Source: Saccostrea cucullata (lineage: Eukaryota). Taken from it: 64,000 nucleotides of DNA. Below, one piece after another: positions 11,253-32,055 of this stretch. The position numbers were made by a program, and so were the translations under genes. The stretch's first letter is position 1. Each line of letters begins with the position of its first letter. The DNA is taken from positions 248,001 to 312,000 of the forward strand of contig NW_026933134.1 of NCBI RefSeq assembly GCF_032062105.1. The letters run 5' to 3'. A model generated the notes under the pieces. That model was not told where the DNA came from. It worked only from the letters and a program-made list of their open reading frames with translations, and searched no databases.

Positions 11253-14200
11253 ATGGTGTGTCAAGGGCTAGCATTTCTCCCCTTGATAACAGTCATTGTG
11301 CCTATTGTAGCTTTCATTACAGCTTATGTGTTTGCTGTTCTTCGAAAAGATGTCAATCCTTACTTTCCATATATAAGGTAGTGTTCTTCAACTTAACAGT
11401 ATTGTGAACCTGCAATATTTATCATGTTAATTTATACAGGATGTAAACGTGGGATGTCCTGCTTATTGCAAATTTAAACCTTCTTTATTTCAGTGACACG
11501 GGAACAAGAATCCCTGAAAGTTGTGTATTTGGTCAACTTTTGAATATATCATCCGCTATAGGTAAAATGCAACAAAAAGCATTAATTTTATGTTCGTGTA
11601 TGTTTTTAAGGTGTTTGGCTTCTGACATTAAAAATAATTGAAAATGATTTTCTTCTTTTTTAATTGTAAGAATAAACATAATAAATTATTTTAAGCCAGA
11701 AAAATGCATATGAATATGATTTAATTTTCAAGCTATAGGTGTTCCTGACAAAGGGAGGTAATTCTCTCATTTTAGTAAAGAAAAAGACCAAATTTGTGTC
11801 CAACATATTTAATATTTATTTTAAACTATGAAATGTTTTCAAATCATTCCAACCTTTTGCTATCTTTTAAAAGTAGTCATAGGGAATATAAATATTGATA
11901 AAATAATAATGATAATTGATAGAAGATAAAATTTAATTCTTATCAAAAAGCACACACCCTCATACAAAAAAATGCCTTTTTTCCCTTTCACAGGGCTTAT
12001 AAAATGAGCTTGGAAAATAAATTAGAAATAATTAACAAGTATTTTTTTTTCTATATATTTGTTACTTAGATGAAGTGCTTTCAAATGGTGTAAAAAATTG
12101 TATATCAATATGAGTTACTTTTAAAGATATTTTAACTTGAATTTCCTCTGACCCATTTTTCTCAAATTTTGACCAGAGGAAATTCGGATTGATTCTGTTT
12201 GCCTCTTCCATGATTTTGGGGGATTTTCTATTTGCCTAAATGAATAAGTGTATTGAAACTCAATCTTTTTCTTTAAAAGAAAAGGGACATTTCATTTTTT
12301 GGGGGACTATTTAAGACTTAGGGGAAAGAGGGGAGGGTGGGTGGGGGGGTGGGGGTTAATATCTATTTTCATGCCCACTCACATTACCTGAGGATAATTC
12401 TTTAATAGTTTGACTAATCATGGCTTTGCCTGTTCTGAGTTGAGAGAATTTTACAGACATTTCAAATATTTTTCTATGCATACTTTGCTCCACTTGTGGC
12501 CCATCCTTCCCCCAGGAATTATTGAATATAGGGTATGTAATGAAGCTAAATTTCACGTAAATGTCATCTTTTCTTCAGTGGTTCTTCAGAAGATTTTTGA
12601 ATAATGCCACCAAAATTCTTAATTACCCCCCACTTCAAGAGGGCGAGACACTTCCTATGAACAAAGTTAAATCCCCTTAATTGAAATTGGGCCAGTTGGT
12701 CTTTCAAAGAAATAAAATATATCAAACTTTACACACCCCAGACAAAAGACCGATTGCCAGACAATCTTTGATCAGAAAAGCTCACTCGGGCTTCCGTGTC
12801 AGGTGAGCTAAAAACCACCACATAGTAATCATTTCACTATAAACGTTTCACAGCAAAATTCCAGTTATTGAAAATGAAGGGAATAAAAAAAAAAGACTAA
12901 ATGAATGTTTTGAACTACTAGTTGTACCAATAACAGCTAGTTTAATTTGCGTCATGCAATGTAAATCTCTCTTGATTTCATTGTATCAAACAAAATGTTC
13001 TTTATTCAAGATGAAAAATGATCAACTATTTAACTTTATTCAGATCCATGTTTCCTTGTGATAGAGATCTATCAAATTGTTACCTTTACAAGTAACATAA
13101 AACATTTTTATATACTGCAAACATTAGATTTTTTGTGCCTTTGACAGAAAACTGCTGTTGCTATTTCAAGAACATCGCTAACTTTATGACCTGCGTATTT
13201 ATAAGTACACAATAAAAATTTTGCTAGAAATCAAACCTAGCCCGATTGTTGAAAAATAGATTACTGCCAAGTATAGGTCATACACAATATTAAACATTTA
13301 CAGAATGTCTTTTCATATTCATTTGTGCATGTTTCAATTTAATATGCACATAGTCTTCTTCAATAAATATCAATGAACACCTTTTAATTTTTCATGTATG
13401 CTCAAAATATGGGTAATGAAAATAAATTGTTGTCAATTTCTAAATAAGGATTTATTTTGAATGGAAAGAAAATGTTTTGTTCAACTACAAACTACCTATA
13501 ACAATAAACATTGAAAAAAACAATAGTTCATGGCATAATTATACCCCTGCTCTGAAGCACAGGGTTTATACTGTTTTTCTTTCTACACTTGTGTGTCTTT
13601 CTGTCAGTAACAAATTTTTGTCCAATTTTTCTCAGCAATCACTCATCATGCTCAATTGCTCATCACAGATGCTTTAAGTTTTAGCACACTCTTTCTTTAG
13701 CCATGCCGTATGTTGGAATTGGTTTTAGACGAATCTGATGTCAACTTCCTGATTATCTGTGCATTTGTCTGTACCACAAATAGTAAATTTTTGTCACAGT
13801 TTTCTCCAAAACTACTCATCACATTTGGAATTGGTTTTAGACGAATCTGATGTCAAATTCCTGATTATCTGTGCATCTGTCTGTACCACAAATAGTAAAT
13901 TTTTGTCACAGTTTTCTCCACAACTACTCATCACAGTTGGAATTGGTTTTAGACGAATCTGATGTCAACTTCCTGTTTATCTGTGCATCTGTCTGTACCA
14001 CAAATAATAAATTTTTGTCACAGTTTTCTCCACAACTACTCATCACAGTTGGAATTGGTTTTAGACGAATCTGATGTCAACTTCCTGTTTATCTGTGCAT
14101 CTGTCTGTACCACAAATAACAAATTTTTGTCACAGTTTTCTCCACAACTACTCATCACAGTTGGAATTGGTTTTAGACGAATCTGATGTCAACTTCCTGT

Positions 14201-17200
14201 TTATCTGTGCATCTGTCTGTACCACAAATAATAAATTTTTGTCACAGTTTTCTCCACAACTACTCATCACCGTTGGAATTGGTTTTAGACGAATCTGATG
14301 TCAACTTCCTGTTTATCTGTGCATCTGTCTGTACCACAAATAACAAATTTTTGTCACAGTTTTCTCCACAACTACTCATCACAGTTGGAATTGGTTTTAG
14401 ACGAATCTGATGTCAACTTCCTGTTTATCTGTGCATCTGTCTGTACCACAAATAATAAATTTTTGTCACAGTTTTCTCCACAACTACTCATCACCGTTGG
14501 AATTGGTTTTAGACGAATCTGATGTCAACTTCCTGTTTATCTGTGCATCTGTCTGTACCACAAATAACAAATTTTTGTCACAGTTTTCTCCACAACTACT
14601 CATCACCGTTGGAATTGGTTTTAGACGAATCTGATGTCAACTTCCTGTTTATCTGTGCATCTGTCTGTACCACAAATAATAAATTTTTGTCACAGTTTTC
14701 TCCACAACTACTCATCACAGATGCTTGAAATTTTTTAGACATGAAATATGGTTGGATTCATTTTTGTACGAATCCATTGTCAATTAACTTTGTTTATTCC
14801 TGTCTGTCCATATTCACATCAGAGTGAGGGTATTACTAGTGAGCACTGGCTCACAGAAATCAAACAAACAAACAAACAAACAACCAAACAAACAATAACA
14901 TAGTTACATACAAAGAACATCATACAACTGCGTTACTGCTCAGATCTGAGAAAATCTGCAACAGAATCAATGATTTTTCTAGATTTTGTCACACGCACAC
15001 TGTTATCTGTTATCTCTGTCAGCACATCCTGTACTCCCTCCCTACCATTTCTGCGATAAGCCAGTTGTAAGTGTGATAAGGAGAGTCCACTGCTGGCAAT
15101 CTTATTTCCCATTCCATTCGAAATCACCTTTTGGTCCAATAAAGGCTTTAGTGTGCTCATTAGACTTTTTGTTGTGCTCTTGTGATGGAATATGGCAAAG
15201 GCAGAGTTTGAAGTGAAAGATGCAGCAAGTTTGACTTCAGGGGAAGGTCCTGTATGGTCCAACAATCTCTTCAAGGCTAAGACATCCTGTAATGAGTCAT
15301 GCGCACTGTATTTGTCTTGTAGAATTTCTTCGAAGAGGTGTAACTGTGAGTATGATGAAAGGTTTGGATGCGAAATTTTGAAAAGAGGTAAGGTATCAAT
15401 GAAACCAATGACTGCAGATGAGAATGCCTCCAAAATGTTTAATTTACTCAAAATGTTGAACAGCACAGGAAGGTCAAACACTTTGGAGTTGTGTCCAACT
15501 AGAACAGCATCTGACTCCGATTTCTTCATGAAGTCGATAAACTGGATCAGTGCATCCTTAATGCTGACTGTCTCAACTTCCTCATCATTGTGGTACATTT
15601 TATTGTTGACTACTTTTATTCCAGTAATTTCTGTAGCTTTTGAGGACATTGGTTTTTCTGGAATGATGTATTTGTTGAAAACCTCATCATTTCTAACTGC
15701 AGACAACTGCACAATATGAGAATCCCTTGCTAAAAATAAAAAACAAATAATTTAATTTTGATTGTAACGCATCATTTGATTGGATAAAAAATTAATCTAA
15801 ATTGTATAATCTGGTTTGCTTACGTCACAATGACTTACATCAAATTGTATCAATCCGCTTGACGTTACGTTTAAAATATGAACTATTTGAAGGCGTTATA
15901 AAGAGAAAATTTGTCTTGTTTTATATTCTTGATGATTGAAAATTAAATCATAAGGAGTGAATTAAATGGCAACCCAAATTATACTGCTACAACCTGGGTT
16001 GGAGCAGTTTACGCTTTTTTATAAACCACTTTGAGGTTTAGAAAGCGTAAACTGCCCCAACCCAGGTAATACAGTATAATTTGGGTTGCTATTTAATTCA
16101 TTCCTTAAGTAAATTCAAGTTTTTAAAATTAAAAGCATTAAAAAAAATACATACAAAAATTGATATATTGTAAATGTATTATATTTAGCATGTATGATAT
16201 TTGGCAGAAATTGACTTTTGAATAAGTAAGCGTAGATTTGATTTAGCGCATTTCTTCATTTTCTTCTTTATGTGTATATGTGCAAGACATTTAGCGTTGT
16301 ACTTGATTTAGCGGTTGCTGCGTTTCGCCAAATCCGCTATTAGAATACACAGCCAAATGTAATCCGTTTACAGTATGCATGATTTAAAAAATTTTGAAAC
16401 ATTATAATAATAGTAACCCTCTTCCCCAAGACTTAACTCCTTCAAAGATGCTTGAATTCTTTCAGAATATGCAATTTCTTTTTAATCAGTGTCCTCAGAA
16501 GGAAGGGTAAAGTTTTGAAAGATATAAAACATGCTCAACTACTTGTACCAATACCGGAATTATGCAAGAGTCTCCATTTCTATTCGTTTTCTATGATAAC
16601 TTTAGTATTATTCCTTCAAAATGCATACAAAAGAAATACCGGAAGAGGGCCATAACCATCAGCATTGACTTAACATTTAAATCTAGGTTCTTACCGAGTC
16701 CAGTAGTTTCCAAATCAAAATAGATCTCTTCAGCATTTAACAGCTGACTTGAAGGGAGATGATCATACTTTGGAATTGTTTTTGGAGCTGGAATTTCAAC
16801 GATGTCAGAGGCCTGCTGGAGATCACATCCTGTTAAATAACTGATGCCTTCCCTTGTTTCTTTTGTAGAAATACTTTGAATTCTGTAAAGAAGATGTATA
16901 CTGTAAAACAAATGATTCTAAACTGAGGTCTTACAAAAGGCCTAGCAAAATAAACAATCACCTAATGTACAGCTAATAAATTAGGAGTTGTAAATAAATG
17001 AAAATCCTGAGCACATCGGCAAGGAAAGAGCACAAAGTAGACCAGAATAGAAAAGTTATGGTACATGTAATTTACTGAAGGGGGGGCTTAAATTTTATCA
17101 CTACTTAAGAATGCCTCCATATCAATACAGCATATAACTTTTTTAACATTTTGTTCGTATATATTACTTAGTAATAATTTGAATTTGATTCCCCACTGTT

Positions 17201-17294
17201 TCCCTCCCTACCACAAAGGATCAGGATTTAAACAAATTTAAATCTTCAATACATGAGGATGTTTACATTTCCATATGACTAAACATAGCTTCTC

Positions 17295-17327
<33 letters not shown>

Positions 17328-20300
17328 ATTTTTTCCCTTTATTTTCCTATGTAAAACTTTGATCCACCATGTATGATTTGAAAAAAAAAATTAATTCTAC
17401 TTTACCTGAGGATGCTTCCATATTAATATCACCAATCATAGCTTTGCTATTCTTGAGAATTTTTTAAAAAATATATTGTACTGTAAAATGCAATTGTGGC
17501 CCCACCCTATCCCTGGGGGTCATGATTTAAACAATCTAGAATCTACACTACCTGAGGATGATTTCATTTCAATATCACTTATCATGGCTTTGCAGTCCTT
17601 GAGAAGATTTTTAAAGATTTCAAATTCTCTATATATTCCTGTGTAAAACTTTGATTGGCTATGTGGTCCCACCCTATCCCCCAGGGTCAAGATTTGAACA
17701 AATTTGAATCTACACTACCTGAAGATGATTCCATATGAGTTTCATCTTACCTGGCCCAGTGGATACTAACTTTGTAGCAAGTTTGGTTGAAATTGGCCTA
17801 GTTGTTCTTGAGAGGAAGATGGAAATGTGAAAAGTTAATGACAACAGATACATTTTTATCAGTAAAGCTCACTTGAGCTTTCCGCTAAGGTGAGCTAAAA
17901 AACTGGGTATGTAGGTAGGTAAAATTTTTATTTTAAGATTGCAGCAAAGCAATATGCCCTCCCTTCTTTGAAAAAAATATTTATCAAACCATGCTATTTA
18001 TAACAAGCATACCGTAAATCTTTGGTGATTCAGAAAACAAATCTTAGTAACATGCAAGATATTAATTCCCACTTAAATTCATACTTATCATCATTCACTT
18101 GTTCTTGGTTTATTTTCATTTTTGAGGTTGACAAAAGGTTTTTTACACCTGACAAATGACAATCAAAGTATACTAGTACGTACTTCCTGGCTTTCAATTC
18201 TCTCCTTCTCCTTTTAAATTTCTGTGTCACTGAAATGGCCTTCTGTCGCTTTCTTTGCAAATCCCTCAGAATGCACTGTCGTCGAGTATAGTAGCCAGGA
18301 GAGAGGCCCAATTTCTTGTTAACCTTTAATAAGGATAAAAGAATCTATTATGTACAACTACAATGTACATACATATACAATACAATCTGCTTTTGATTAA
18401 AATTTGCAGAATTTTCAAATGTAAGAGATAACTTGAGTGGTTCAACTCAGATATGACACAATAAGCATGAAAAAATAAAAATTTACAAACCTTTACAAGA
18501 TATCTGTGTCCAACATTTTTCTGGGCTACACATGCAGCAACTCTATATCTGAGGCTTGAAGAAGAGCTGTAATGATGGGTCTTTGGGGCTTTTGCAGACA
18601 CCATTCTGTGAAAACTCTCATTGGACTGTGTGCTTCCTAAGCATGAAAGACGATCAGAATGACTTGCATATGAACTGAAGACTTCTTTCAGATCATCCTG
18701 AAGGAACCTATCTTTCAGGGGTTTTCCATGTGGAAGTGACTTGTACCTCAGGTTAGGGTTGTTAATGAAGTTGCACCACCTTGAGGAGCAGTGTTGGTGA
18801 TCTCCAAATATGTGTAATGGAATTGATGAAAGGTCTTCTTTGATTTGAGAAGCATTTCCTTTTCCCTGTGCTATGGAGTAACTGAAGCATTTCTGAATGT
18901 ACTTTATCACAGACAAAGTTAGAGATGAATGTTTTTTCTTCAAGGTAAACAAAGAGTTTGTAAACAGTTTCTTTAGATGATTTTTATCAGACAACTTCTT
19001 AATATCAGCATTGACATTAGCTTTCAGTCTTGCAATAGTGGTAGAGTCCTCATCTCCAATGATTCCATCAATGGTTATTCCTTTACTTTTCTGTAGATCT
19101 TGGACCATCTCAATAACCATATCTGCCTCCATGGCCTTTGAACTACCCTCCCAATTCTTTGAGCACTCATGGGCTGCTGGATTCTTGTTGGTTGATTCAG
19201 CTACACTGCATACTCTGCAATTCTTAGACCTCAGAGAGTATGACAATACTTTGTCGGAGAGAGGACCAACCATGGAACAATGACCTGAAAAATTACAAAT
19301 TAGAAAAACTGTATAACTTATAGATGTATTCGTTGTTTTTATTAAAGCATTTTTCATGCATTTCTTAACTTAATAAAATGTATGTCTTAATACTTTGGCA
19401 AGGAAAATCAAATTCGATCACTGATGTTACATGTATGCATTTGGTAATAACCTTTAACCCCTTTAGTCAGCAATGAACCTGTGCGTCCAGTGCACTATAG
19501 CATAATTAGGTCAAATATTTATTTTTCATGAGGGGTGCTGTATAATTAATGCAAATCGTTCAACTTTAAAAAAGTAAACAGTTGCTATAAAACGTGTTTG
19601 CAGGATGCAATAGGGACCAAATTCCTACTTCTTTGAAGTTAGTGTTCTAAGTATTGACAATGCTTTGGTAAATAATGTTTCTAATAAGTGTCGTTAAAAA
19701 TTGGTTGCGTGCCATAGAGCGATTAGCGAATACGCTAACTGTGTAAAATCACCTAATATTTTAATATTTTGATTTGACTCATTATGACTCTTAATGATTT
19801 TTCTCGTGTAAACATTATATCCTTTTTTGGCTCCATCATCCCACCTTGGGTCCATATTTCGAACAAAACTGAATATGCTTTACCTGCATGAGCAACATAA
19901 CTATTCATGGCTGTTCTTTAGAAGAATATTTTACAATTTATATGGACAGTTGAACTTTGAGATATGTGTCTTTCTAAATTTATTGCATCTGTTTCGTGGG
20001 CATAAAATTTTGTTGTTTTGACATCAAAAATAATCTCGTCGTTGTTTTAAAACTAACCCTAGGTCTAAAAAAAATATGTTTGTTTCCTGTAACCCGACCG
20101 ACCCATTCAAATTACCCCCCGGGTGAATTTTTTTTCTGACAAATGGCAAAACTTCGTTTGATCAATCAGCTGATTCCATTTATTAAAAAAAGAAAATTAG
20201 CTTGTAGCTTAACTTGAGACATAAAATATGTCAACCTAGTTTACATTTAAGTTTGATTAGTTATAAAGAGTAATCATTATTATAACAACAATTTCCCCCT

Positions 20301-23300
20301 ACAACTTTCTGAAGATCGTTTTCCGCCGCTAGGCAGCCATTTTGGATGCCATGTTGGGTGTCCACTGTAAATATGACACCTGGTATATTGAGTCCAGGGA
20401 TGTTTGACAATGTTTGACAATTCATAAGAAAAAAAAAATCCCGACCTACCGACCCTTAATTTTTTTGGAATGTTACAGGAAACAAACATATTTTTTTTAA
20501 AGCCCTATTCAATATATAGTCATATAAAATTTCGTGTGGGATTTAATTTTGTTGGAATTTTGTTAACGGAATAAACAAAATTTGTGCTTTTACAGTATTT
20601 TTACCTGATAAACTATCATATGTCTTTCCGCTACCCCGTTTTTGCCATCCAGCATCTACAGCAACAACTAGTCCATTTTCGTTCATCTCTCTGAAAAATA
20701 GTTAAATAACAGACATCAGTTATTAACTGTGAACCTGTCTCCTTTAGAACACCCCCTAATGTGCATAACATTCTGCATATTTATCAACACAAATTATACT
20801 GTACATGACTAAACCTTATATTTATCAGTATATCAGATTCTATTAACTTGATCACTATCAATTATTATTAGGTATTCCCTATGATTTTCATTTGGGGATC
20901 AAAACTAAAACACGAGGCTCTTGGGGCTTGGGCCACAATACTCTAGGAAGTCACTGTCTCTGTCCAATCTAATTAAAATTATTTGTTAGATCCACTTGCA
21001 TACTCGCTACACAAACATCTAACAACATCTCATTGAGGGTCACGTCAGAGGTCAAATTCTAATCAACCAATCAAATTGTCTCTTGCAAAATCATTGTTTA
21101 TTTGTTGACGCAATTGAAGAAAATAAGTCTAGGGTTGTTCCGAATTTGAACTCTGAGTGACCCTCTATAGGATGTTGTTAGATGCTAGTGTAGCAATTAT
21201 GCGAGCAGATCTAACATCTAATTTTGATTAGACTGTGTCTCTGTCACTCTTCAATTTTTTTTCTTCAATCAAATTTTCCTTTTTTAATTCATTCTAGGAA
21301 TGAATTTAATAGCTACCCAAGTTATACTGTATATCCTGGGTTGTGCCAGTTTTGGCTTTCTATACAGCGAGGCTTTCATTTCAAAGCAGGTTACACTATT
21401 ATAACTTGGATAACTATGAAGTTAATTCCTTATAATTTAATTCTCCATCAATAAGTAAAGAAAATAAGACAATTTTTCCTTCAAAGATGCATGCAATTAG
21501 TACATACATGTATCTTATATGTAAAATTAAATGGGTTGTTATGTTTGTGACATACATGTTAGTAATTGTGACTTAACCAACACAGGTTATACCATATGAC
21601 CACTACACATGTATGCTAGACACCCATTGATCTGATCAGAAAAGCTCTATTGCGCCTTTGGCTCATTTGAGCTAAATAGTGAGATTTAAACTGAATTTAT
21701 ATTGTTTACACACTCATTCATCATTTCCAGTTCCTTCTGCAAAGCATCAGACATAGACTCTGCAGCAATATCTTCAACAGCTCTGCCTATCTCTTTCTGT
21801 CTTTTGTCCAGCATGGCATGGCTTACAGGTGGTATATTCAGCTCAGAAAGGAGACTGTTGACTTGTGTTGCACCAATACCAACATGTACAATTGCTGTAA
21901 ATACAAATTCATAAATGTAAAAAAGAAATCAATCTAATCACTTTAAACAAGAAGCTTGTGAAATACAACACTCATCTTAGTCTCCTTTATTTTCTCTCTT
22001 TATTACCAGAAATTAAAAATAGAACCCATACTTTTAACAAACTAAACCCCTAGGGGTAATGGCAACAAAACTTGAAATGATCTACATTAGGATGATTCAA
22101 TATCAATATGATTAATACAGTAATAAGGCTTTGCTGTTCTACAGAGAATTTTTTCCATCTGAATAGTCAAATGGTTTAGAGAACAAATCAAAAAAAGTCC
22201 CATTCTAACTTGTTATACCCTTTCTATGATGTGAATATAGGTTCTTTTGTGAATATACAGGCAGACACATGGATAAATAGGAAGCAGACATTGGATTTCT
22301 ATAAAAGTGAATTCCATCATATGGCATATTGCCAAAACAAGGTGTGACTGTGTGGTAAAACACAAGAGTAAAACAGTATACCAGTACCCACTTCCCTCTC
22401 CTTTAAAGCATATTTTGAAAAGTTGACAGACAGATAAATGGAAAAAGATCAGAAAGCTGAAATGAGCCTCTGGCTTCAATAAGTTAAAAATAGCTTGCCT
22501 TCTCATCAAGTTTTTATTCTGAATTAAACATTATCAGGGGCGGATCCAGGAATTGAAGTTAGACGGGCAGGGTTCGACATTAACGTTAGTCCGTTAGTCT
22601 CAGACTAATAAGTCTCAGACTAATACATTTTCATTTGGACTAATAAAAGTTGTGGCGTATTAGTCCGAATGGACTAATAAAGTTTTCTGGGGGAAAAAAT
22701 TACCGAAGTTCTCGACAACTTTCACTGGAAAACCCGTATGTATTTTTAGCTTTCTTGCATCTTGGCGGAAAGTTATGTAATTCTGAGTCAATTCGGCACT
22801 TAATTTTAGGACTCATTGGAATGAAATTAAACATTTTAGGGATTATGATTTATCATGACTCATAAAGAAAGATGTCGGGCATTTGGATGTCGTAATCATT
22901 TATAGAGAATAATGAGATTGGGAACACGATCCTAGTTCCTGATCAGGCAATTTCAACAAATATTGGTATAAAACATTTCATGTAAACGCATGCTTTGTTT
23001 ATTACAAAAAAAGTATAAAAAGTACCTTGAAATGTAAATTCTATTGTTTAATTATATTTTTGACGGACTCATAAAATTGCCTGTGGACTAATAAAATTAA
23101 AGATACACTAGTCCGGCTAGACCAACGCCGAAAAATGTTAGTGTCGAACCCTGGCGGGTTGGGCGCCAGATTCAGGCAGGGGGTCTGGGGGCCGCCTTGA
23201 GGCAAAGCCCTGGTGGGGGCCAAGGGGGCGAAGCCCCCCGAAGCTCTTGGAGTCTAGAGGTTTTGTAGGGTAAAAATGAGGTCTACCAAGTAGACATCAG

Positions 23301-26300
23301 AAACATTTCCTCGACAAAACTATGTTTTATGCTAACTTTGACAATTTCAGGGGGGGTGCGCGCCGGGTGTGCCCCCCCTTAAATCCGCCACTGATTATAT
23401 CAATTTATAGATACATATACCTATTTACTGGCTATGAGGACAAAAGCAAGTTTATTGTCCCCCAAGACAGCAACAATTTCTCAAGGTGCGTCCAAGTTGC
23501 TGTTGAGGGGGACAACAAACTTGCTTATATTGGAATAGACAGGTAAAACTCAATCAGGCTCTTGTGACTTGACAATAATAAATATACATGTAACTGATGT
23601 AGGGGATGTGTACGTTAAACTTCTTACCTGCTGATAGCTTTGTATTTACATCCCACACTCTTCCATGTTTTTTCCCCGATTTTACATGGTTAATATGATT
23701 ACACTTTGTATTGCTGCAACAGACCTGAAATGTTAATGTAAAATCAATGAATCCCTAATTACAGGTCACTGTTCTAAATTCATTCACCATTAATGAAATC
23801 AAATGCTTGGGAAAAAAGAATTTAAATATGCATTACTTCAAATTACTTCAAAGAAAAAAATGTAACATCTTTCAAAACTAAAAATATGGATATATGGAAT
23901 ACTGCCTGTTTTATATGGAGAAAAATTCAAGGAAAAACCTTTCAAGGTTGTTTTTATACAAACTGTGCAAAAATTGGTGAGTTCATACCTTTAACAAAGA
24001 AGCTAAACCATATGTCAACACAGAAATAGTGTGTGAAAGTTGCAATGGTAAGCCACATTTACAACATCCCCGCAAGCCCTCAGCTAACACTCCAAGTTCT
24101 ACTACTCTCCTCCCCTCCTTCCAATCCTCAGATGTAGTCACTTCTTCCCCATCCACCACCTCCTCTCTTTCCAGTATATTCAAATTTGGCAATTCTATGA
24201 ATAATGAATAAAAATTATCACCATTACACATTCTTTATTATCTACTGTAACACATCCTGACTAGTTGACTGTTTAGATACACTTACTAAATTCCAAGAAC
24301 CAGTTTTCAAAATAATTCATAGTGCCGATATACAACATATTTTTCCATATACCGATATTTCTCAAGATATTCTGAAATCAATCTAAAATATGATCTACTT
24401 TCTTTTACTCGACATTTGCTTGGGCCCCTGGTCATTCACATGTAAACAGACGGTGTATGAGGTGCAGCGAAGAGTTGCATAGCATTTGCAAGATCTTTCA
24501 ACATTTTAAAGTTGATTTCTTACTCCAGATTGTAAGGTTAAGTAGTCTGTATTAATAAGTTAAAATCTGCATCAACAACTACACCGCCATTTTGATTATG
24601 AATGTAAAAGAAGCTATATGGTTGAACAATTTTTTCCCGTAATGCATTATCATGATTATATACATTTCTATTTTCAAAACAATTAGACCGCTAACATTTT
24701 GTTTGTGACTTAGTAAGATCATATGATCCAATTAAAGAAAAATCATGTAAATCTCAAATTCAAATGAGCAAATATTCATTGAGTTTAGAATAGACTTTGG
24801 AGAAAATTTGTCCTGTCGTTCCCGTGTAACAATTAGTGTTGGGCCCATTGGCAAGCTGATGTCAATTAAAAAAATTTAGGTCAATTTCGGAATTGATTTC
24901 ATAATATCTTAAGAAGTATAAGGAATTACGGAATGAAATTTGAAGGAATGAAGATTGTTTATATATGGATAGATATGGGTAAAAAGTAAATTTGTAAAGC
25001 ATTCAATTTAAAAGAATTTTATTGGTGAAAGTAGGTACCCTATGAAAAGAGTTCCATACCTTTATTTTTTTTTTAACACCTCAATTTTTTTTCTAAGTGA
25101 TCTAAAGGCCTGTGGGTCAAATGAGTATATCTTTCATCACGTGCAGTGTATTAAAATAAAATACAGTAATTATCTTTGATTAGTATTGTCATGTAAGGTA
25201 AGACATCTGATTCAGCAAATGTAATTTTTTTTTTGTAACAGCTAGGCCTAGTATATATATATTTTATTGAAATCCACATATAACATCATGTATAGTTAAA
25301 TTTATTATTATCAAGTATGATTCAAATTTCCATGTTGCACTTTGATTACAATAGGCCATGTGGTTTTCAATAAAATACCCCCCCCCCCCCAAAAAAAATT
25401 ATATTTTTAAAACTTTGTTGTCAATCAGCATGATCAGATGAAAACTTGTTTTTATCAAAATATATCTTTGAAAATTCAATTATATACTTGATAAAAACAA
25501 GTTTTCAATGTCTTAGTTATGTCATGTTGTTTTTCAATGAAATATTGAGAAAAATTCAATATCTTCTCTTTTGGTGCACATCTTTAACTATTATAATTTT
25601 TTTTTAAATAGCTACACGTAGTCATAGTTCAAAAAGTCTTTAGATTAGACCTGGTATATAAAATGAACATCAACAAATTCATGTACCTCCCTTTAATATT
25701 TCTAATATTTTTAATAGACCTATGTGTAATCATGGTAATTTAGATGCAGATATGAAAACGAGTCTTTTAGATTACGTATTTTACATGTACAAACCGTGAT
25801 CGTGATCAACGCTGACAGGGGTTGCACTGGCGGAGTAATTGTGGTCTGTAAGGATAGCTCCCCTAATCCATCGAGTCAATTGCCCTGCAGATACTTTATC
25901 ATATCTCTCCTTCTGCTTTTTCGAGACGAACCCATGGCGTCTGTACTTTGGTTTCACCATCTCAACCAAAGTTACCGCGCAGACCTTGACTTCTCGTCTG
26001 CTTTTTGTTTACATTATCGTAATCCGGTTCACATCCGCGAAATGTAAAATGCTTATTATATGTTTGTTTTCTGGCATAAAAAATCGTTATTATGTTACTT
26101 TCTATGGATGATGATTATAATTATTTGTAGAAACTATTAATTCTCTGCCGTATTGAATTCTTTATTATAACGACATTCAGACCAATTTCCGGCAGTTCGA
26201 GTTGCGCGGTGAATTCAATTTCGTCAGAAGCGAAACACCTTAAATTATTTTGAACTTGAAACAGTGTATTCTTGAATGTTTTTAAATGTATTTTTAAGAA

Positions 26301-29300
26301 AATAATTTGTTGCAGTATTTAATCAATTGATTGTTGAAAATTTTTAATGAAAAAGTAAACGCATGGACAGTCTTCTCCAAATCTCTTTTTCAGTACATGC
26401 CCTTTGGGCACCTGTAACTAATTTCACTAGCCCGTACAAATAGAAATGCCTAGAATTTTACCAAGATTTTTTTTTTTTTTTTGCCTTTTTATGCCAAGGA
26501 AATGATCCGAAATCCATTTCTATCAATCTATTGTCTTGCCCTTAACATTTTTTTCAATCTGTACATTTTTTGTGGCTCCTTGCAAAAGTTCCTTTTGAAT
26601 TGAGGTAGAATAAACTGTCGCTAAAATTTTCTTTTGCCCTTCTTTTAAAATGAAAAATCAGATACTTTAAAGTATATTTAATGTTATTAGTATTCTTAAA
26701 CTTGATTCTGCCACAGAATTTACATGCTCTTTGGGCTTGTAAGTGTGCAATTTTCACATGCCCACTTTCAACTTTACCAGTTCAAGGCTTTGGACTCCCA
26801 GGATTTGGTCAAGTCTGCATGGATTAAATAAATGTTTTAATGGTAATCATGCTAATAGATATCATAACTTTCATGAACAGAATGTCAATATTTTGATTTA
26901 CACATTCCATGATTTTTTTTTTCTTTAGCCATCTGCACTATATATGTACGGTACAAGCTTGTTCAAAGCATGGTTCAACTTGGAGATGCCTCCATTATGA
27001 GCTACAATAAACACACCATTGTATGGGGATCATTGGCTGTTCTAGGACTAAGTTTGGTAGCAAATTTCCAGGTACGGATTAATTTTAATTTTGAATTATT
27101 TTTGATAAATATTGGACTTTTTCCCACCTACCATTTTTCTTGGCTTCAGTGTTAAAAAAAAAAAGATAAAGGGGCTGAGGGGCCATCACATTGTAAACTC
27201 AAAAACTTAATATGTTTATTTTCCATATACTGATTTTATTAATTCTGAATCCACTAATAAAGATACAGATTTCTTGACTTTGTTTTACAATTTGCATAAA
27301 AAAATATACTTTCAGAAATTTAGGAAAACAATGTGTTTAACTTAAGATATAATTTTTGTATTATTTCAGGAAACCTCAGTGGAGGTTGTTCATGTTATAG
27401 GAGCGACATTTGTGTTAGGTTTTGGAGTGGTTTATGAGTTTCTCCAAACATCAATATCATATAAAATGTATCCAGTCTGCAACGGTCTACGTATCTGTAG
27501 AATTCGCCTTGTGATTAGCATAATATCACTCATCGGTTTCATAATGAGTAAGACATTTTTATTTTCTATAATTCAAATTTTATTTATAACGAAATGCAAG
27601 CTTCCTTATGGGGTTTTAATATGATTCAAATCATGTCACAAGGAATCAAGAACATTTTAAAAGTATCTAAAAGAAGTCGGTTCACTTTATGCATAAAATG
27701 GCCCTGTAGATACACCAATTAATTGATCAACACTTGATTTTCTATTTGAAGCATTAAAATAAAATAGACACTTGGTGCTTTCATATCCTATTAAAAATAT
27801 TCCCCTAAAAGTCCAAGTCTTGGAGAACTGGCTTTTTGAAATTGCAATATTCTTGAATTTTTAGGTAAACAGGTATAATTGAGTACTTTCAGTGAAGAAA
27901 AATTATATGAGCGCACTCTCTGATCTAAAAAATGAAACTTGTGACGTCATAATGCATTGACTAGCCAGAAAATGACGTCATTTTTGATAGATACGCAGTC
28001 ACCAAAGATCTAAGTGATATTTAATGCATTGTTAACTAAAACTTTGCAGTTTCAGTTTTTCAGAAATTCACAGGGCCAAATAAGGCAAAAGTGAACCTTG
28101 TTCTTTGCACATGCTTACATTTATAAATTTCTACAGTTCATAGTCCATTCTATCTTGACCTCACTATTGTTATTTTTATGAAGTATACAGGAACTAATAT
28201 CTTTAACTTTACAATGTATATAGGGAGTTTCTATTTTAAACATATATGTTTAAACATTTATGTGGAATGCACATAACTCTCAACATGGCCCATTGTGAGG
28301 GGGAAATTTTTTTTGACTGTGTCCTAACAACTCCATGGTTCGGATCTTGGTCCACATGAATATCATAATCTATATCTTTGAGTCAACATTGTTACATTTT
28401 TGTAAAGGGTATAGGCAAACCTAATACCGCAGACAGTCAGAGAGGCAAACAAAATATTAAAGGAACCCATATTTTTTTTTTGTTCTCAGATACAATGAAA
28501 CCTCATTATCTTGAGCTTAAAAAACTTACAGATATCCAAGGATTCAAGATATCCAGTGTAAAATGTTTTTTAAAAGAATAATGGGTTGGGACTTCCAAAT
28601 CACTTTGACATAGCCATGGTATTCAAGATATCAGTGTTTAAGATATCAAAGTTCAACTGCATATCTTGTATTTTTCCATATATCAGGGGCCTGAGTCTAC
28701 TTCGGCCCTAGACAGACTTCATTTACATTCATTCTGGGAAATTACTTGTTTTTTTTTTTTACCTTACCTAATGACCAATCACATCACTATAGGTGGGCTC
28801 AGTTTCTACTTATAAAATCCTGTGTTTGTTTGTCATCCCCTTGCAATGGAGATGGAGGGGATACAGTAACCCAGATCTGTATAAGTTTGTGAGTGGGTGA
28901 GTTACATGTAGTGCTGAACGAAACAGAAGTGAGGTAATTTGCATTGGTATCAATGATTTCTACTCTTTGTGACAGGATGCTCCGCTTTGCACTACCCTTT
29001 TTGTTGGTATGTTTGTTTTATGCCGGTTGATGGCAGCAAATTTATAACTATTTACAGCCTAAGAGGTATTTTCTATGCAGATCCAACTGTAACACAGGAC
29101 CTCTGTTTATATGGTCTCATCCGAAGGGTGGATTTCCATGTCCCACAAAAGGAGTCAAATCCGTGGCATAAGGATCATGACCTTGCTCTGCAATTGTTTA
29201 ACAAATGCGCTAAACACTGCGTTAAAAGACTCCTATAAGATATATGACTCCCTTAAAAATGACCTGGAGTGAAAGGTCAGGTGAAGACCTTTGATGTTTG

Positions 29301-32055
29301 ACCTTGAGTCAAGGTCATGAGATACCTTCAGGTCATGGAACAACAAAAAAAGCGAGAATCTATTCCATATTTCAAGCGTTTCAGTAAAGACACGTTGTAG
29401 ACTTACAGAAAATAAACAACTTTCCAAACCTGATACGCTTTTCATTGGGGAAGACGTATTTTTTCCTCAAGTTCGTGTGCCCTTTGCTAAGGAAGGGAAA
29501 ATTTTCACTGCATAAACACCATCAAATATAAGCATTAATACCAGTTTATATTGTATGAGAAAAAAAAATAGAAAATAAGTCTAAAGAAATAATTATTATT
29601 AGAAGTTCGGATAATATTACACGCTCTAATTCTGCTGAAAGGGAAGAACTCACTATGCATCTGGTTCCGCATAATGATATATGAGCACTTTACACAAAAA
29701 CCAAAAAATGAAAGGTAAAAGTGCATCTCACCCTAATTACGACAGAGTGGCTACAGAGAGAGAAATGTCCTCCAGCGTGGATCACTGTCGGCGAGATATA
29801 TCTCATTTTCTGTTTCTGTGGGAAATTCCTTTTATCGTTGTATAGTTTGCCTCTGTTTGACAAGTCTACATAATAATTGCACAGAAAATGATTTAAATAT
29901 ATCTAGTACTTCTATTTATGTCACAAATCAAGACTACTACCTTTATTTTTATGGAACTGAAAGGGAAAACCAGAGACCTAAAGGACAAGATAGGCTAAGG
30001 CCCCTTTTTGGCCACTTGTTTGGTTGTCATTTATAAGGATGCAACAGTTTTACTTTATCAACTGAAAACCACTTGTCACACTGTCACAATCTAATTAAAA
30101 TTAGATGTTAGATCCGCTGAATACTCGCAACACTAACATGCATAATAAATGCTTTTAAAATGTTCAGCAGACCTCTTGAAGACAATTAATTTTTATTTGA
30201 AACAACTTATGAAATAAAAAAAAATACCTTTACATGTTCTTTTCTTACTTATGTTTTTTTTTTCCGCGGAATCTCAATTTCTGTTCAATTCGCTGGTAGA
30301 AAATAACGCGGATATCTTAAGACTCTCCTTATATGCCTTATATTTATATTAAGTTCAATGGAACAAATTTCCGCGCAAAATTTATGACCGCGTACATAGC
30401 GTAAATTAATACCAAGGGGAAACAAGATGTGTTTGTGAAACTCAATGCGCCCGGCGGCAACAGAGTTAAAAAAAACACATTTATAGCATATAGGTCAAGT
30501 CAAGGTCACAAGGTTATTGATCTTGATGTCATTTGAAAGAACTTGATTAGTGAAGTCTGCATACCAAACATGAAGTCTCCATCTCTCATGGTTCAAGAGT
30601 TATTATGAAGGTTCAAAAAAGCTATTTTTAGCACAAAGGACACAGTCAAGGTCACAAGGTCATTGACCTTGATGTCATGTGAAAAGGCCTAATTAGTGAA
30701 GTATGCCTGCCAAATATTAAGTCTCTATCTTTCTTCGTTCAAAAGTTATGGCAAAGGTCAAAGTTTTCCAACAAAAAAGCTATCTCTATTGTATAGGTCA
30801 CAGTCAAGGTCACAAGGTTATTGATCATTTTTAAAGAGCTTAATCAGTGGTGTATGCATACCAAATATGAAGTCTCTATCTTTCATGATTCAATAGTTAT
30901 GGCGAAGGTTAAAGTTTGCAGAAAAAAAATATTTTTAGCATATAGGCCACAGTTAAGGCCACAAGATCATTGACCTTGGTGTCATTTGAAAGAGCTTAAT
31001 TAGTGGAATAGGCATATCAAATATGAAGTCTCTATCATTCATGGTTCAAAAGTTATGACGAAGGTTAAAGTTTGCAGACAAACAGATAAACAGACAGACA
31101 GACAGGACAAAAATAATATACGCCTCGGATCTTTCGATCCGAGCGCATAAAAACTATACTTCTACAGTATTAGTAATATAATTCTAAAGTATATCCAAAT
31201 TGTAAACCCATGTTCTTTAGAAAAATACGTTTGTACTTTATGAGGATACACCCCTTTTCTCGTTTCAGGCTTAGTCTTTGCTGCTATTTCCAGGTACCAA
31301 GGTCATCCCAAGGACAGGCTTCATTGGAAACCCTCGGACGGTGTAAGTTTAAGTCGTTTAAATTCTAATGACATAAAATAACGAAGCAACATAAAACATA
31401 GCTGCAGGACTGTGGCGTTATGGTTTTATATATTTTGTTATGGTCAAAAACAAAAATATATAATACATGTACCATAACGCTACAGTCCTGCAGCTGTACA
31501 TTAAACAAGAATTTTGATGCAAATTGCGTCACTTCCGTTGCGCACAGAAGGACACACCCCTCACACACACTATATCCCCTCCATCTCATTTGCAAGGGAC
31601 TAAAAAGCATGGTACATTGTCCAAATTTTCTCTGTTTGATTTTAATCAACTTTTACGTTGTGATCAGGGTTTACTAAAGATAAAGTTTCTTTGAAATTCA
31701 GAAAACATTATGAGATTTCCTATATAAAACTAAAATTAAAGTCTTTCAACTCAATGCACAACGTTTCTTTTTCACTATCCGAAACCAGTAAGGCAGTTGA
31801 GCTACAATCTTAACAGAGACTCACGAGAGCCGTTTGCATTAGTCAAGCATACATGTTCTTTTCCAGGGATATACCACTCATATAATAAGTTCAGTATCCG
31901 AATGGATCACGGCTATTGCTTTCCTCTTTTTCTTCACTACGTACGTCAAGGATTTCAGCAAGATGAAGTTAGATGTCGTGGCCCGGGTACGGGTTCAACA
32001 CCTCGATGAACCCGTGTACGACGACTTAAGCGAGGACTCCCGACTTATTACATAG
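11253..32055 (+). CDS. DRAM: DRAM (DNA damage-regulated autophagy modulator; Frag1/DRAM/Sfk1 family), 258 aa, 6 exons
   Basis: Exons 11253-11377, 11494-11561, 26929-27071, 27370-27547, 31269-31342, 31867-32055. All introns are GT-AG and phases are consistent (777 nt total). Translation MVCQGLAFLPLITV...PYISDTGTRIPESCVFGQLLNI...CTIYVRYK...LGLSLVANFQETSVEVVHVIGA...LHWKPSDGGYTTHIISSVSEW...FFFTTYVKDF matches DRAM1/2 motifs (PYISDTG, IYVRY, VANFQ, HW.P...GY..H..S...EW). Confidence 0.93.
13539..14856 (+). mobile_element. DINE/HINE-like non-autonomous element nested in the 3' region of the transposon
   Basis: 5' TTATACCCC with hairpin, 3' GGGGTATT followed by hairpin GTGAGCACTGGCTCAC. Encloses the 112-bp array. 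Confidence 0.65.
13712..14719. repeat. Tandem array, 9 x 112 bp, near-identical units
   Basis: TTGGAATTGGTTTTAGACGAATCTGATGTC recurs at 13713, 13825, 13937, 14049, 14161, 14273, 14385, 14497, 14609. Confidence 0.97.
14933..25960 (-). CDS. Transposase (Mutator-like/Kolobok-type DDE with Zn motifs) fused to a DEDDh 3'-5' exonuclease and PML-C-like domain, 884 aa, 9 exons
   Basis: Exons (minus strand): 25960-25795, 24194-23989, 23724-23628, 21894-21714, 20690-20605, 19284-18491, 18323-18184, 16882-16695, 15729-14933. All are GT-AG, totalling 2655 nt in one open frame. Transposase motifs: GRRVVELG, CxxC..C..C, WDVNTK, AVDAGWQKRGSG..YDSLSGH, CRVC..HECSKNWEGSSKAME, IGDEDSTT, DKNH, H..GDH.HC...WC, GSTQSNESFH..V..KAPK. 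Exonuclease motifs: FDLETTGL (ExoI), GHNSKVFD (ExoII), FIDTL, AHDSLQD (ExoIII). Exon 1 is the least certain. Confidence 0.88.
15951..16107. mobile_element. Palindromic foldback MITE in transposase intron 8; decayed relative at about 21295-21432
   Basis: TAAGGAGTGAATTAAATGGCAACCCAAATTATACTG...CAGTATAATTTGGGTTGCTATTTAATTCATTCCTTA, with about 65-bp arms. Confidence 0.75.
17200..17902 (-). mobile_element. HINE/Helitron-like non-autonomous element with TACCTGAGGATG-type internal repeats; related fragments at about 12380-12813, 21600-21675 and 22400-22490
   Basis: Repeated acactacctgaggatg units. Terminal hairpin AGCTCACTTGAGC...GGTGAGCTAAAAA is shared with 12779-12813. Confidence 0.6.
20060..20507. 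mobile_element. MITE with about 30-bp TIRs; related element at about 61073-61313
   Basis: AAAAAAATATGTTTGTTTCCTGTAAC ... GTTACAGGAAACAAACATATTTTTTT, with internal CCGACC motifs. Confidence 0.75.
20965..21235. mobile_element. Foldback MITE; partial copy at about 30087-30141
   Basis: CAATCTAATTAAAATTA..GTTAGATC ... GATCTAACATCTAATTTTGATTAGACTG, long imperfect inverted arms. Confidence 0.65.
22535..23393. mobile_element. MITE (CAGGGGCGGAT...ATCCGCCACTG) with 5-bp TSD ATTAT, carrying a second nested MITE at 22568-23153
   Basis: TSD ATTAT at 22530-22534 and 23394-23398. Inner TIRs CAGGGTTCGACATTAAC / GTTAGTGTCGAACCCTG (16/17 match), flanked by ACGGG/GCGGG. Confidence 0.8.
27670..28106. mobile_element. 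Non-autonomous DNA element with imperfect TIRs of about 37 bp, in DRAM intron 4
   Basis: AAAGAAGTCGGTTCACTTTATGCATAAAATGGCCCTGT ... ACAGGGCCAAATAAGGCAAAAGTGAACCTTGTTCTTT. Confidence 0.55.
30421..31152 (-). mobile_element. HINE/Helitron-like element with about 4 units of about 150 bp (AAGGTCA-rich), in DRAM intron 4
   Basis: Reverse of the architecture at 8341-9833: AACAAG terminus, tandem GAAGTCTCTATC units, GACA microsatellite at 31077-31103, terminal hairpin CTCGGATC..GATCCGAG and GCATAAAAA. Confidence 0.75.

What the first reader, a model, noticed from the sequence alone, without database searches (positions are those of the whole stretch)
11606..26243. Complete 14.6-kb Kolobok-like transposon encoding a transposase-DEDDh exonuclease fusion, inside a DRAM intron
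Seen in sequence: 17-bp TIRs (16/17 match), TTAA duplicated on both sides, and a 9-exon minus-strand gene that splices into one 884-codon ORF with no stop or frameshift. The N-terminal two thirds keep the DDE triad candidates (AVDAGW, IGDEDS, QSNESF), the DxxH motif and Cys/His clusters. The C-terminal third is a DnaQ/DEDDh exonuclease with all catalytic residues (DLE, FD, H..D). Established: TTAA TSDs with purine-purine termini characterise Kolobok elements, and some Kolobok lineages carry accessory nucleases. Inference: an autonomous, possibly still mobile cut-and-paste system with its own 3'-5' exonuclease, perhaps for end processing or donor-site repair. I cannot tell whether this family is already catalogued.
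Basis: partly seen in the sequence, partly recalled or inferred. Interest (0 to 1): 0.92.

Follow-up and report, generated by a model that had tools for sequence, protein, structure and literature searches.

The report
Oyster KolobokD transposon with Plex9-like exonuclease
This is a real, intact and recently multiplied cut-and-paste jumping gene of an already described group (KolobokD) sitting in an oyster gene's intron; the one unreported point is that its built-in DNA-chewing enzyme is the closest relative found of fish Plex9 and the tail of vertebrate PML and shares an intron position with them, so those host defence genes may descend from such a transposon.

Summary
Observation confirmed in every detail: 14,630-bp element, TTAA on both sides, 17-bp TIRs (16/17), 9 GT-AG exons giving an open 884-codon frame, 733-nt DRAM intron without it. 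At least 24 full-length copies lie in the genome (probably the oyster Saccostrea cucullata); ten copies differ by 0.7% on average, 6 of 10 have an open frame, and coding changes are under purifying selection. Paralogous empty sites show that insertion duplicates exactly TTAA. One RNA contig splices transposase exon 6 to exonuclease exon 9, so the fusion is real. The architecture is not new: it is KolobokD (Kojima and Bao 2022, PMC9587614). Verdict: new family of a known lineage. Side lead: the exonuclease + SAM-like part is closest to fish Plex9 and PML exon 9 (PDB E 2e-35, Z 24, rmsd 1.3) and shares one intron position with three fish plex9 genes and, by published residue numbers, with the PML exon 8a/9 boundary. 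Domestication of KolobokD into PML/Plex9 is plausible, but my tree does not resolve direction (AU p 0.47). The scan noted both points before on other pieces of this genome.

The parts
11606..11609 (.). Left TTAA target-site duplication
   Evidence: TTAA flanks all sibling ends read
11610..11626 (+). Left 17-bp terminal inverted repeat (3' end of the element relative to its gene), begins GG
13712..14720 (.). Internal tandem array, 9 x 112 bp, 97% alike, downstream of the stop codon; unit number differs among copies
14933..15729 (-). Exon 9 (aa 620-884): DEDDh exonuclease body (D705, H763, D768) and SAM-like PML_C subdomain (about aa 811-882)
16695..16882 (-). Exon 8 (aa 557-619): linker and exonuclease motif I (D613, E615); phase-1 intron follows six residues after D613
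18184..18323 (-). Exon 7 (aa 511-556): basic helical end of the transposase
18491..19284 (-). Exon 6 (aa 246-510): transposase core with CCHC finger, D323, DxxH, second Cys/His cluster, E468
20605..20690 (-). Exon 5 (aa 217-245): first catalytic Asp, D229
21714..21894 (-). Exon 4 (aa 157-216), Mutator-like Pfam match
23628..23724 (-). Exon 3 (aa 125-156)
   Evidence: splice sites kept in all copies read; no RNA test
23989..24194 (-). Exon 2 (aa 56-124), with a CxxC
   Evidence: matches RefSeq model of a sibling copy from its residue 57
25795..25960 (-). Exon 1 coding part (aa 1-55); least supported exon
   Evidence: sibling RefSeq model has the same number of residues before exon 2
26223..26239 (-). 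Right 17-bp terminal inverted repeat (5' end relative to the gene)
26240..26243 (.). Right TTAA target-site duplication
11495..11562 (+). Host DRAM/Frag1-family exon upstream of the insertion
26929..27072 (+). Host DRAM/Frag1-family exon downstream of the insertion
   Evidence: next exon 27370-27548 hits Frag1

Best explanation
An intact, autonomous member of a young KolobokD DNA transposon family. One spliced mRNA, antisense to the host DRAM gene, encodes an 884-aa protein: a Kolobok DDD/E transposase followed by a DEDDh 3'-5' exonuclease and a SAM-like nucleic-acid-binding subdomain. The transposase binds the 17-bp TIRs, excises the element and inserts it at TTAA, duplicating those four bases (precise duplication shown; catalysis inferred from the family). 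The fused exonuclease is catalytically intact and kept by selection (shown); most likely it is a Plex9/TREX-like DNA exonuclease that acts in cis on 3' ends left by excision, i.e. donor-site flanks or flank remnants and by-products, rather than on the target junction (inferred, about 50%).
For: Ends, TSD, gene. At least 24 contigs carry both ends 12-21 kb apart at 96-100% identity; 56 TTAA+TIR ends vs 0 control. Empty sites of the repeat hit by sibling C12821 carry one TTAA, 18 exact and 243 within 2 mismatches. Mean pairwise divergence 0.68%, exons 0.27% vs non-exons 0.79%; 15 synonymous vs 10 non-synonymous variants on 576 vs 2,076 sites, ratio about 0.19. 6 of 10 copies have an open frame. 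RNA contig joins exons 6-7-8-9. 26 of 34 long homologues of exon 9 also carry the transposase; another family in this genome has both domains in one 690-codon open frame. H699, D705, H763, D768 invariant in 38 of 38 transposase-fused homologues. KolobokD definition: PMC9587614. Closest solved structure Plex9.1, a shown ss/dsDNA exonuclease.
Against: No empty allele of this site in the assembly and no test in other individuals. No transposition or nuclease assay exists for KolobokD in the papers searched. Expression in two oligo-dT libraries is very low (depth 0-3), and RNA may come from sibling copies. An unrestrained 3'-5' exonuclease would destroy the 3'-OH ends that strand transfer needs, so its substrate is uncertain.
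Confidence: 0.9

Rival explanations
1. Same element, but the exonuclease is not part of the cut-and-paste chemistry: it clears cytoplasmic or extrachromosomal DNA, damping innate DNA sensing or restricting competing retroelements, as Plex9, gar PML and TREX1 do for their hosts.
For: Closest relatives with known function restrict LINE-1 and clear DNA (PMC10123124). Most Kolobok lineages transpose without this domain. Insertions are precise with no sign of trimming. Related exonuclease-SAM proteins without a transposase exist (P0120, P0127).
Against: The domain is fused in frame to the transposase in most long homologues, which ties it to the transpososome; fish Plex9 has lost the SAM-like part and is cytoplasmic/ER-bound, unlike this protein's layout.
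Confidence: 0.3
2. The family is recently extinct: this copy is intact only because it is young.
For: 4 of 10 copies are already broken; no two copies read are identical (closest 13 substitutions in 13.4 kb); no insertion polymorphism was shown.
Against: Spliced transcripts in separate studies; open frames in 6 of 10; purifying selection and several sub-lineages with shared indels point to repeated rounds from working copies.
Confidence: 0.2
3. Two neighbouring genes (a transposase and a captured host exonuclease) wrongly joined by the reader, or a host gene between chance repeats.
For: Several database models hold only one of the two domains.
Against: One RNA contig spans exons 6-9; intronless single-ORF fusions exist (P0128; 690-codon frame); the whole unit moves between TIRs.
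Confidence: 0.02

Closest known systems
KolobokD lineage of Kolobok DNA transposons (Kojima and Bao 2022, PMC9587614)
   Same: TTAA TSD, RR..YY ends, DDD/E transposase with DxxH and both zinc-finger motifs, DEDDh (DnaQ) exonuclease, mollusc host.
   Different: The paper gives one paragraph, likens the nuclease to exuperantia, TREX and ERI1, does not mention PML/Plex9 (0 occurrences of PML) or the SAM-like subdomain, and its text does not say whether the nuclease is fused.
Kolobok-1_CGi, Kolobok-7_CGi, Kolobok-9_CGi, Kolobok-1_ADi (rows of Data S5 of PMC9587614)
   Same: By eye, the same motif strings around the three catalytic residues and both zinc fingers.
   Different: Compared by eye only (no reference to those sequences); the supplement does not label which rows are KolobokD.
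Fish Plex9 and the C-terminal DEDDh domain (exon 9, PXL) of vertebrate PML (PMC10123124, PMC13659232)
   Same: Best PDB sequence hits (E 2e-35 to 1e-23 vs 3e-4 for Exu/TREX), best fold match (Z 24.2, rmsd 1.3), Pfam PML_C, and a shared intron six residues after the first catalytic Asp.
   Different: Single-locus host genes without transposase or TIRs; teleost Plex9 hits cover only the exonuclease part; human PXL is catalytically dead.
Exuperantia (EXO-SAM pseudo-nuclease)
   Same: Exonuclease fold followed by a SAM-like bundle (5L80, Z 20.5).
   Different: 17-19% identity, catalytically inactive RNA binder, host gene.
KolobokE, KolobokP, KolobokH, Kolobok0; piggyBac
   Same: Kolobok transposase with an accessory protein; piggyBac shares the TTAA target.
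   Different: Accessory is lambda-type nuclease, His-Me nuclease, RecQ or KolX; KolobokP has long direct repeats; piggyBac has YY..RR ends and another transposase.

Membership tests
Kolobok superfamily | [quoted passage not shown] | tested here: met
   empty paralogous sites with one TTAA.
Kolobok superfamily | Termini 5'-RR ... YY-3' with TIRs | tested here: met
   GG...CC, 17-bp TIR; definition.
Kolobok superfamily | DDD/E transposase with C/DxxH between second D and E | tested here: met
   D229, D323, D345xxH348, E468; Pfam Mutator-like.
KolobokD | DEDDh (DnaQ) exonuclease as accessory domain | tested here: met
   D613, E615, D705, H763, D768; Pfam RNase_T; fold match.
KolobokD | CCHC zinc finger downstream of the first catalytic D (shared with KolobokP, E, 5) | tested here: met
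   C268-x2-C271 ... H284-x-C286.
KolobokD | Zinc-finger motif between DxxH and the catalytic E | tested here: met
   H408, C411, C416 cluster in exon 6, matching the H..C..W.C columns of Data S5 by eye.
KolobokD | Placement in the KolobokD clade of the transposase tree | not testable with these tools
   Reference sequences exist only as paper text, unlabelled by lineage; not typed in.
KolobokP | Long terminal direct repeats and His-Me finger nuclease | tested here: not met
   No long direct repeat at the ends; accessory domain is DEDDh.
piggyBac | YY..RR (CC..GG) ends and piggyBac transposase | tested here: not met
   Ends are GG..CC; Pfam gives Mutator-like only.
Plex9 / PML-CDE exonucleases | Closer to Plex9/PML than to TREX or Exu in sequence and fold | tested here: met
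Plex9 / PML-CDE exonucleases | Plex9 nested inside transposon-borne exonucleases (needed for a transposon origin) | tested here: inconclusive
   Nested in the best tree, but a tree holding all transposase-fused rows together is not rejected, AU p 0.47.
Plex9 / PML-CDE exonucleases | Metal-dependent 3'-5' exonuclease activity on DNA | not testable with these tools
   Needs an assay; catalytic residues are intact.

The most novel reading that the evidence does not exclude
The exonuclease-SAM module of vertebrate PML (exon 9) and fish Plex9 was domesticated from the last exons of a KolobokD transposon in early jawed vertebrates, so that a DNA transposon's own nuclease became a host weapon against retrotransposons and part of a tumour suppressor; the oyster element is a living, catalytically intact model of that ancestor.
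Probability: 0.45. Interest if true: 0.72.

Novelty: new member of a known kind. Interest (0 to 1): 0.42.

Why it matters
As an element it is an ordinary member of a described but untested lineage; its value is practical: an intact, transcribed, young copy with RNA-supported exons makes the open question of what the KolobokD exonuclease does directly testable (wild type versus exonuclease-dead). The side lead matters more if true: the origin of PML's exonuclease domain and of Plex9 is unexplained in the papers that describe them, and the shared intron plus closest-relative status point to KolobokD, a parallel to the KolX to P2X7 capture proposed in the same Kolobok paper.

Tried and rejected
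Empty allele of the DRAM site in the assembly: none, both flanks are single-copy or repeat only. Joined-flank patterns for three sibling copies: no match; the fourth worked. Second gene in the 3' part of the element: four short ORFs gave no Pfam match. KolobokD family names or this TIR in the paper's supplements: not found. Papers linking Kolobok with PML/Plex9: none found (the one co-occurrence, PMC9319628, holds each word once and was not read). Full-length gar or shark PML through a length-matched search: not retrieved. Exuperantia-like control for the intron: no DNA served for the Anabrus genes. N-terminal parts of P0120/P0127: no Atlas hit, no transposase motif. TIR search around relatives' loci L051, L055, L056: nothing that encloses the gene. 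Careful (bootstrap) trees did not finish; quick trees were used. The spliced 884-aa protein was not used as a query in any search; all searches were exon by exon, and exons were joined only inside a script to check frame and stops.
Full report
Observation. TTAA lies at 11606-11609 and 26240-26243, enclosing 14,630 bp that begin GG and end CC with 17-bp inverted repeats matching at 16 positions. Nine minus-strand exons with GT-AG introns give 2,655 nt, 884 codons and a stop. Exons 4 and 6 match Pfam Mutator-like transposase, and exon 9 matches RNase_T, Exu_RNase_H_like and PML_C. The flanking + strand exons are DRAM/Frag1-like and the intron is 733 nt once the element and one TTAA are removed. 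I searched exon by exon and left out any search with the joined protein; exons were joined only inside a script to check frame and stops.

It is a mobile family. The first and last 300 bases each find 29 near-complete matches at 96-100% identity, and 24 contigs carry both ends facing each other 12-21 kb apart. TTAA plus TIR occurs 56 times against 0 for the control. Every end read has TTAA and the flanks differ. Sibling C12821 sits in a repeat whose other copies carry a single TTAA at that point (18 exact, 243 within two mismatches), so insertion duplicates exactly TTAA and leaves the flanks untrimmed. No empty allele of the DRAM site itself is in the assembly. Ten full copies differ by 0.68% on average, 0.27% in exons and 0.79% elsewhere; coding variants are 15 synonymous to 10 non-synonymous on 576 and 2,076 sites, a ratio near 0.19. 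Six of ten have an open frame; the others carry a frameshift, a nonsense codon or an insertion. Shared indels define sub-lineages. This is the picture of recent, repeated amplification from working copies; present-day activity is inferred.

The fusion is real. One 1,927-nt contig of run X7 lies on exons 6, 7, 8 and 9 and skips 167, 1,301 and 965 bases at the predicted GT-AG sites; X9 and two reads of X22 support the exon 6-7 joint. These transcripts may come from sibling copies, X7 is only guessed to be RNA (its contig is spliced), and depth in two oligo-dT libraries is 0-3. Independently, 26 of 34 long homologues of exon 9 also match exon 6, intronless fusions exist, and a second family in this genome has both domains in one 690-codon open frame. 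A RefSeq model 98% identical to our exons is from Saccostrea cucullata, the likely host. Relatives are named from mussels, scallops, oysters and krill.

What is known. Kojima and Bao (PMC9587614) define Kolobok by TTAA duplications and RR..YY ends, and KolobokD as the lineage with a DEDDh exonuclease in molluscs, arthropods and cnidarians; they suggest it degrades DNA intermediates from the 3' end. All testable features are met, including both zinc-finger motifs. Tree placement against their references could not be run. The element is therefore a new family of a known lineage.

Mechanism. Shown: ends, target duplication, one spliced gene, intact catalytic residues, selection on them (H699, D705, H763, D768 invariant in 38 of 38 fused homologues). 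Inferred from the DDE superfamilies: TIR binding, excision and strand transfer at TTAA. For the exonuclease I favour action in cis on 3' ends left at excision (about 50%), because it is fused and insertions are precise; clearing of free DNA or restriction of retroelements is the main rival (about 30%); trimming of the transposon's own ends is least likely because strand transfer needs their 3'-OH (own knowledge).

The PML/Plex9 lead. Exon 9 finds as best solved relatives 9L8B, 9L85, 9MRD and 9MRC (E 2e-35 to 1e-23), far ahead of Exu and TREX (3e-4); 9MRC is zebrafish Plex9.1. The model (pLDDT 96.8) overlays Plex9.1 at Z 24.2, rmsd 1.3, and Exu at Z 20.5. Our intron 8 is phase 1, six residues after the first catalytic Asp. 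The same position and phase occur in plex9-type genes of electric eel, American eel and Cottoperca and in elements of a scallop and another oyster. In human PML-I the retained catalytic-site Asp is D614 (PMC13659232) and exon 9 covers aa 621-882 (PMC11602975): again six residues, and an exon of 262 aa against our 265. That last match rests on published residue numbers; no human sequence was fetched or compared. PML and Plex9 are reported only from jawed vertebrates, and their papers do not mention a transposon origin. Common ancestry of the exon is thus well supported. Direction is not: fish sequences form one clade (99) inside the transposase-fused set when rooted on Exu-like cricket proteins, but holding the fused set together is not rejected (AU p 0.47), full-length PML was not sampled, five unlabelled or long rows and the rows without transposase were left out of that tree, and the intron could be older than both, since exu could not be checked. 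I put domestication from KolobokD at 0.45.

Earlier notes of this scan reached the same two conclusions on other pieces of this genome. I had written my reading before looking and treat them as repeats, not as support.

Verdict. Real, intact, young, transcribed KolobokD element; new member of a known kind; interest 0.42, carried mostly by the testable PML/Plex9 link.

Noticed in passing
L054 (P0256, Procambarus clarkii): A RefSeq eEF1gamma isoform splices its GST-like exons onto one last exon encoding the same exonuclease + PML_C module: a possible independent exon capture of the kind proposed for PML, or read-through into an intronic element.
   Followed up: partly
L048:8001-10448, L049:8001-10316 (P0120, P0127, P0255): Intronless 770-840-aa proteins with a low-complexity N-terminus and intact exonuclease + PML_C but no transposase, on Mb-size contigs; possibly domesticated or retrocopied.
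   Followed up: partly
G000 C828:143925-145811 and at least 9 more contigs: A second multi-copy KolobokD-like family with transposase and exonuclease in one 690-codon open frame; many further diverged families in the genome.
   Followed up: no
G000 C22611:35949-51123: Two left-type ends face each other around a decayed, 57-59% identical coding region: an older relative or a chimera with a new end.
   Followed up: no
L016, L017, L018: Three contigs share the same right flank, so one insertion was duplicated with its surroundings or assembled three times; copy counts may be slightly inflated.
   Followed up: no
G000 C4084, C20616, C11174, C10860, C8521, C6369, C6306: 63-66-base matches at 81-83% to the right end: a related family or short derivatives.
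   Followed up: no
window 12380-25600: The element's introns and 3' region hold pieces of high-copy oyster repeats (heavy read pile-ups at 16200-16500 and 17400-18030) and differ among copies by 100-2,100-base insertions while exons stay intact.
   Followed up: partly
L053: Cottoperca gobio has at least nine tandem plex9-type exonuclease units, each with the same intron after motif I.
   Followed up: partly
window 3009-5399 (-): Single 796-codon ORF that reads like an SLC26/prestin-type anion transporter (identification from own knowledge).
   Followed up: no
window 37847-38233 (+): Exon with a paired-like homeodomain, Alx/aristaless-like by eye.
   Followed up: no
window 53791-54508 and 57695-59066: Two MITE-like units with long inverted arms built of 10-base repeats.
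   Followed up: no
window 8440-9700 and 30469-31082: Degenerate arrays of about 147-base units, in opposite orientation to each other, typical of oyster satellite-like repeats.
   Followed up: no
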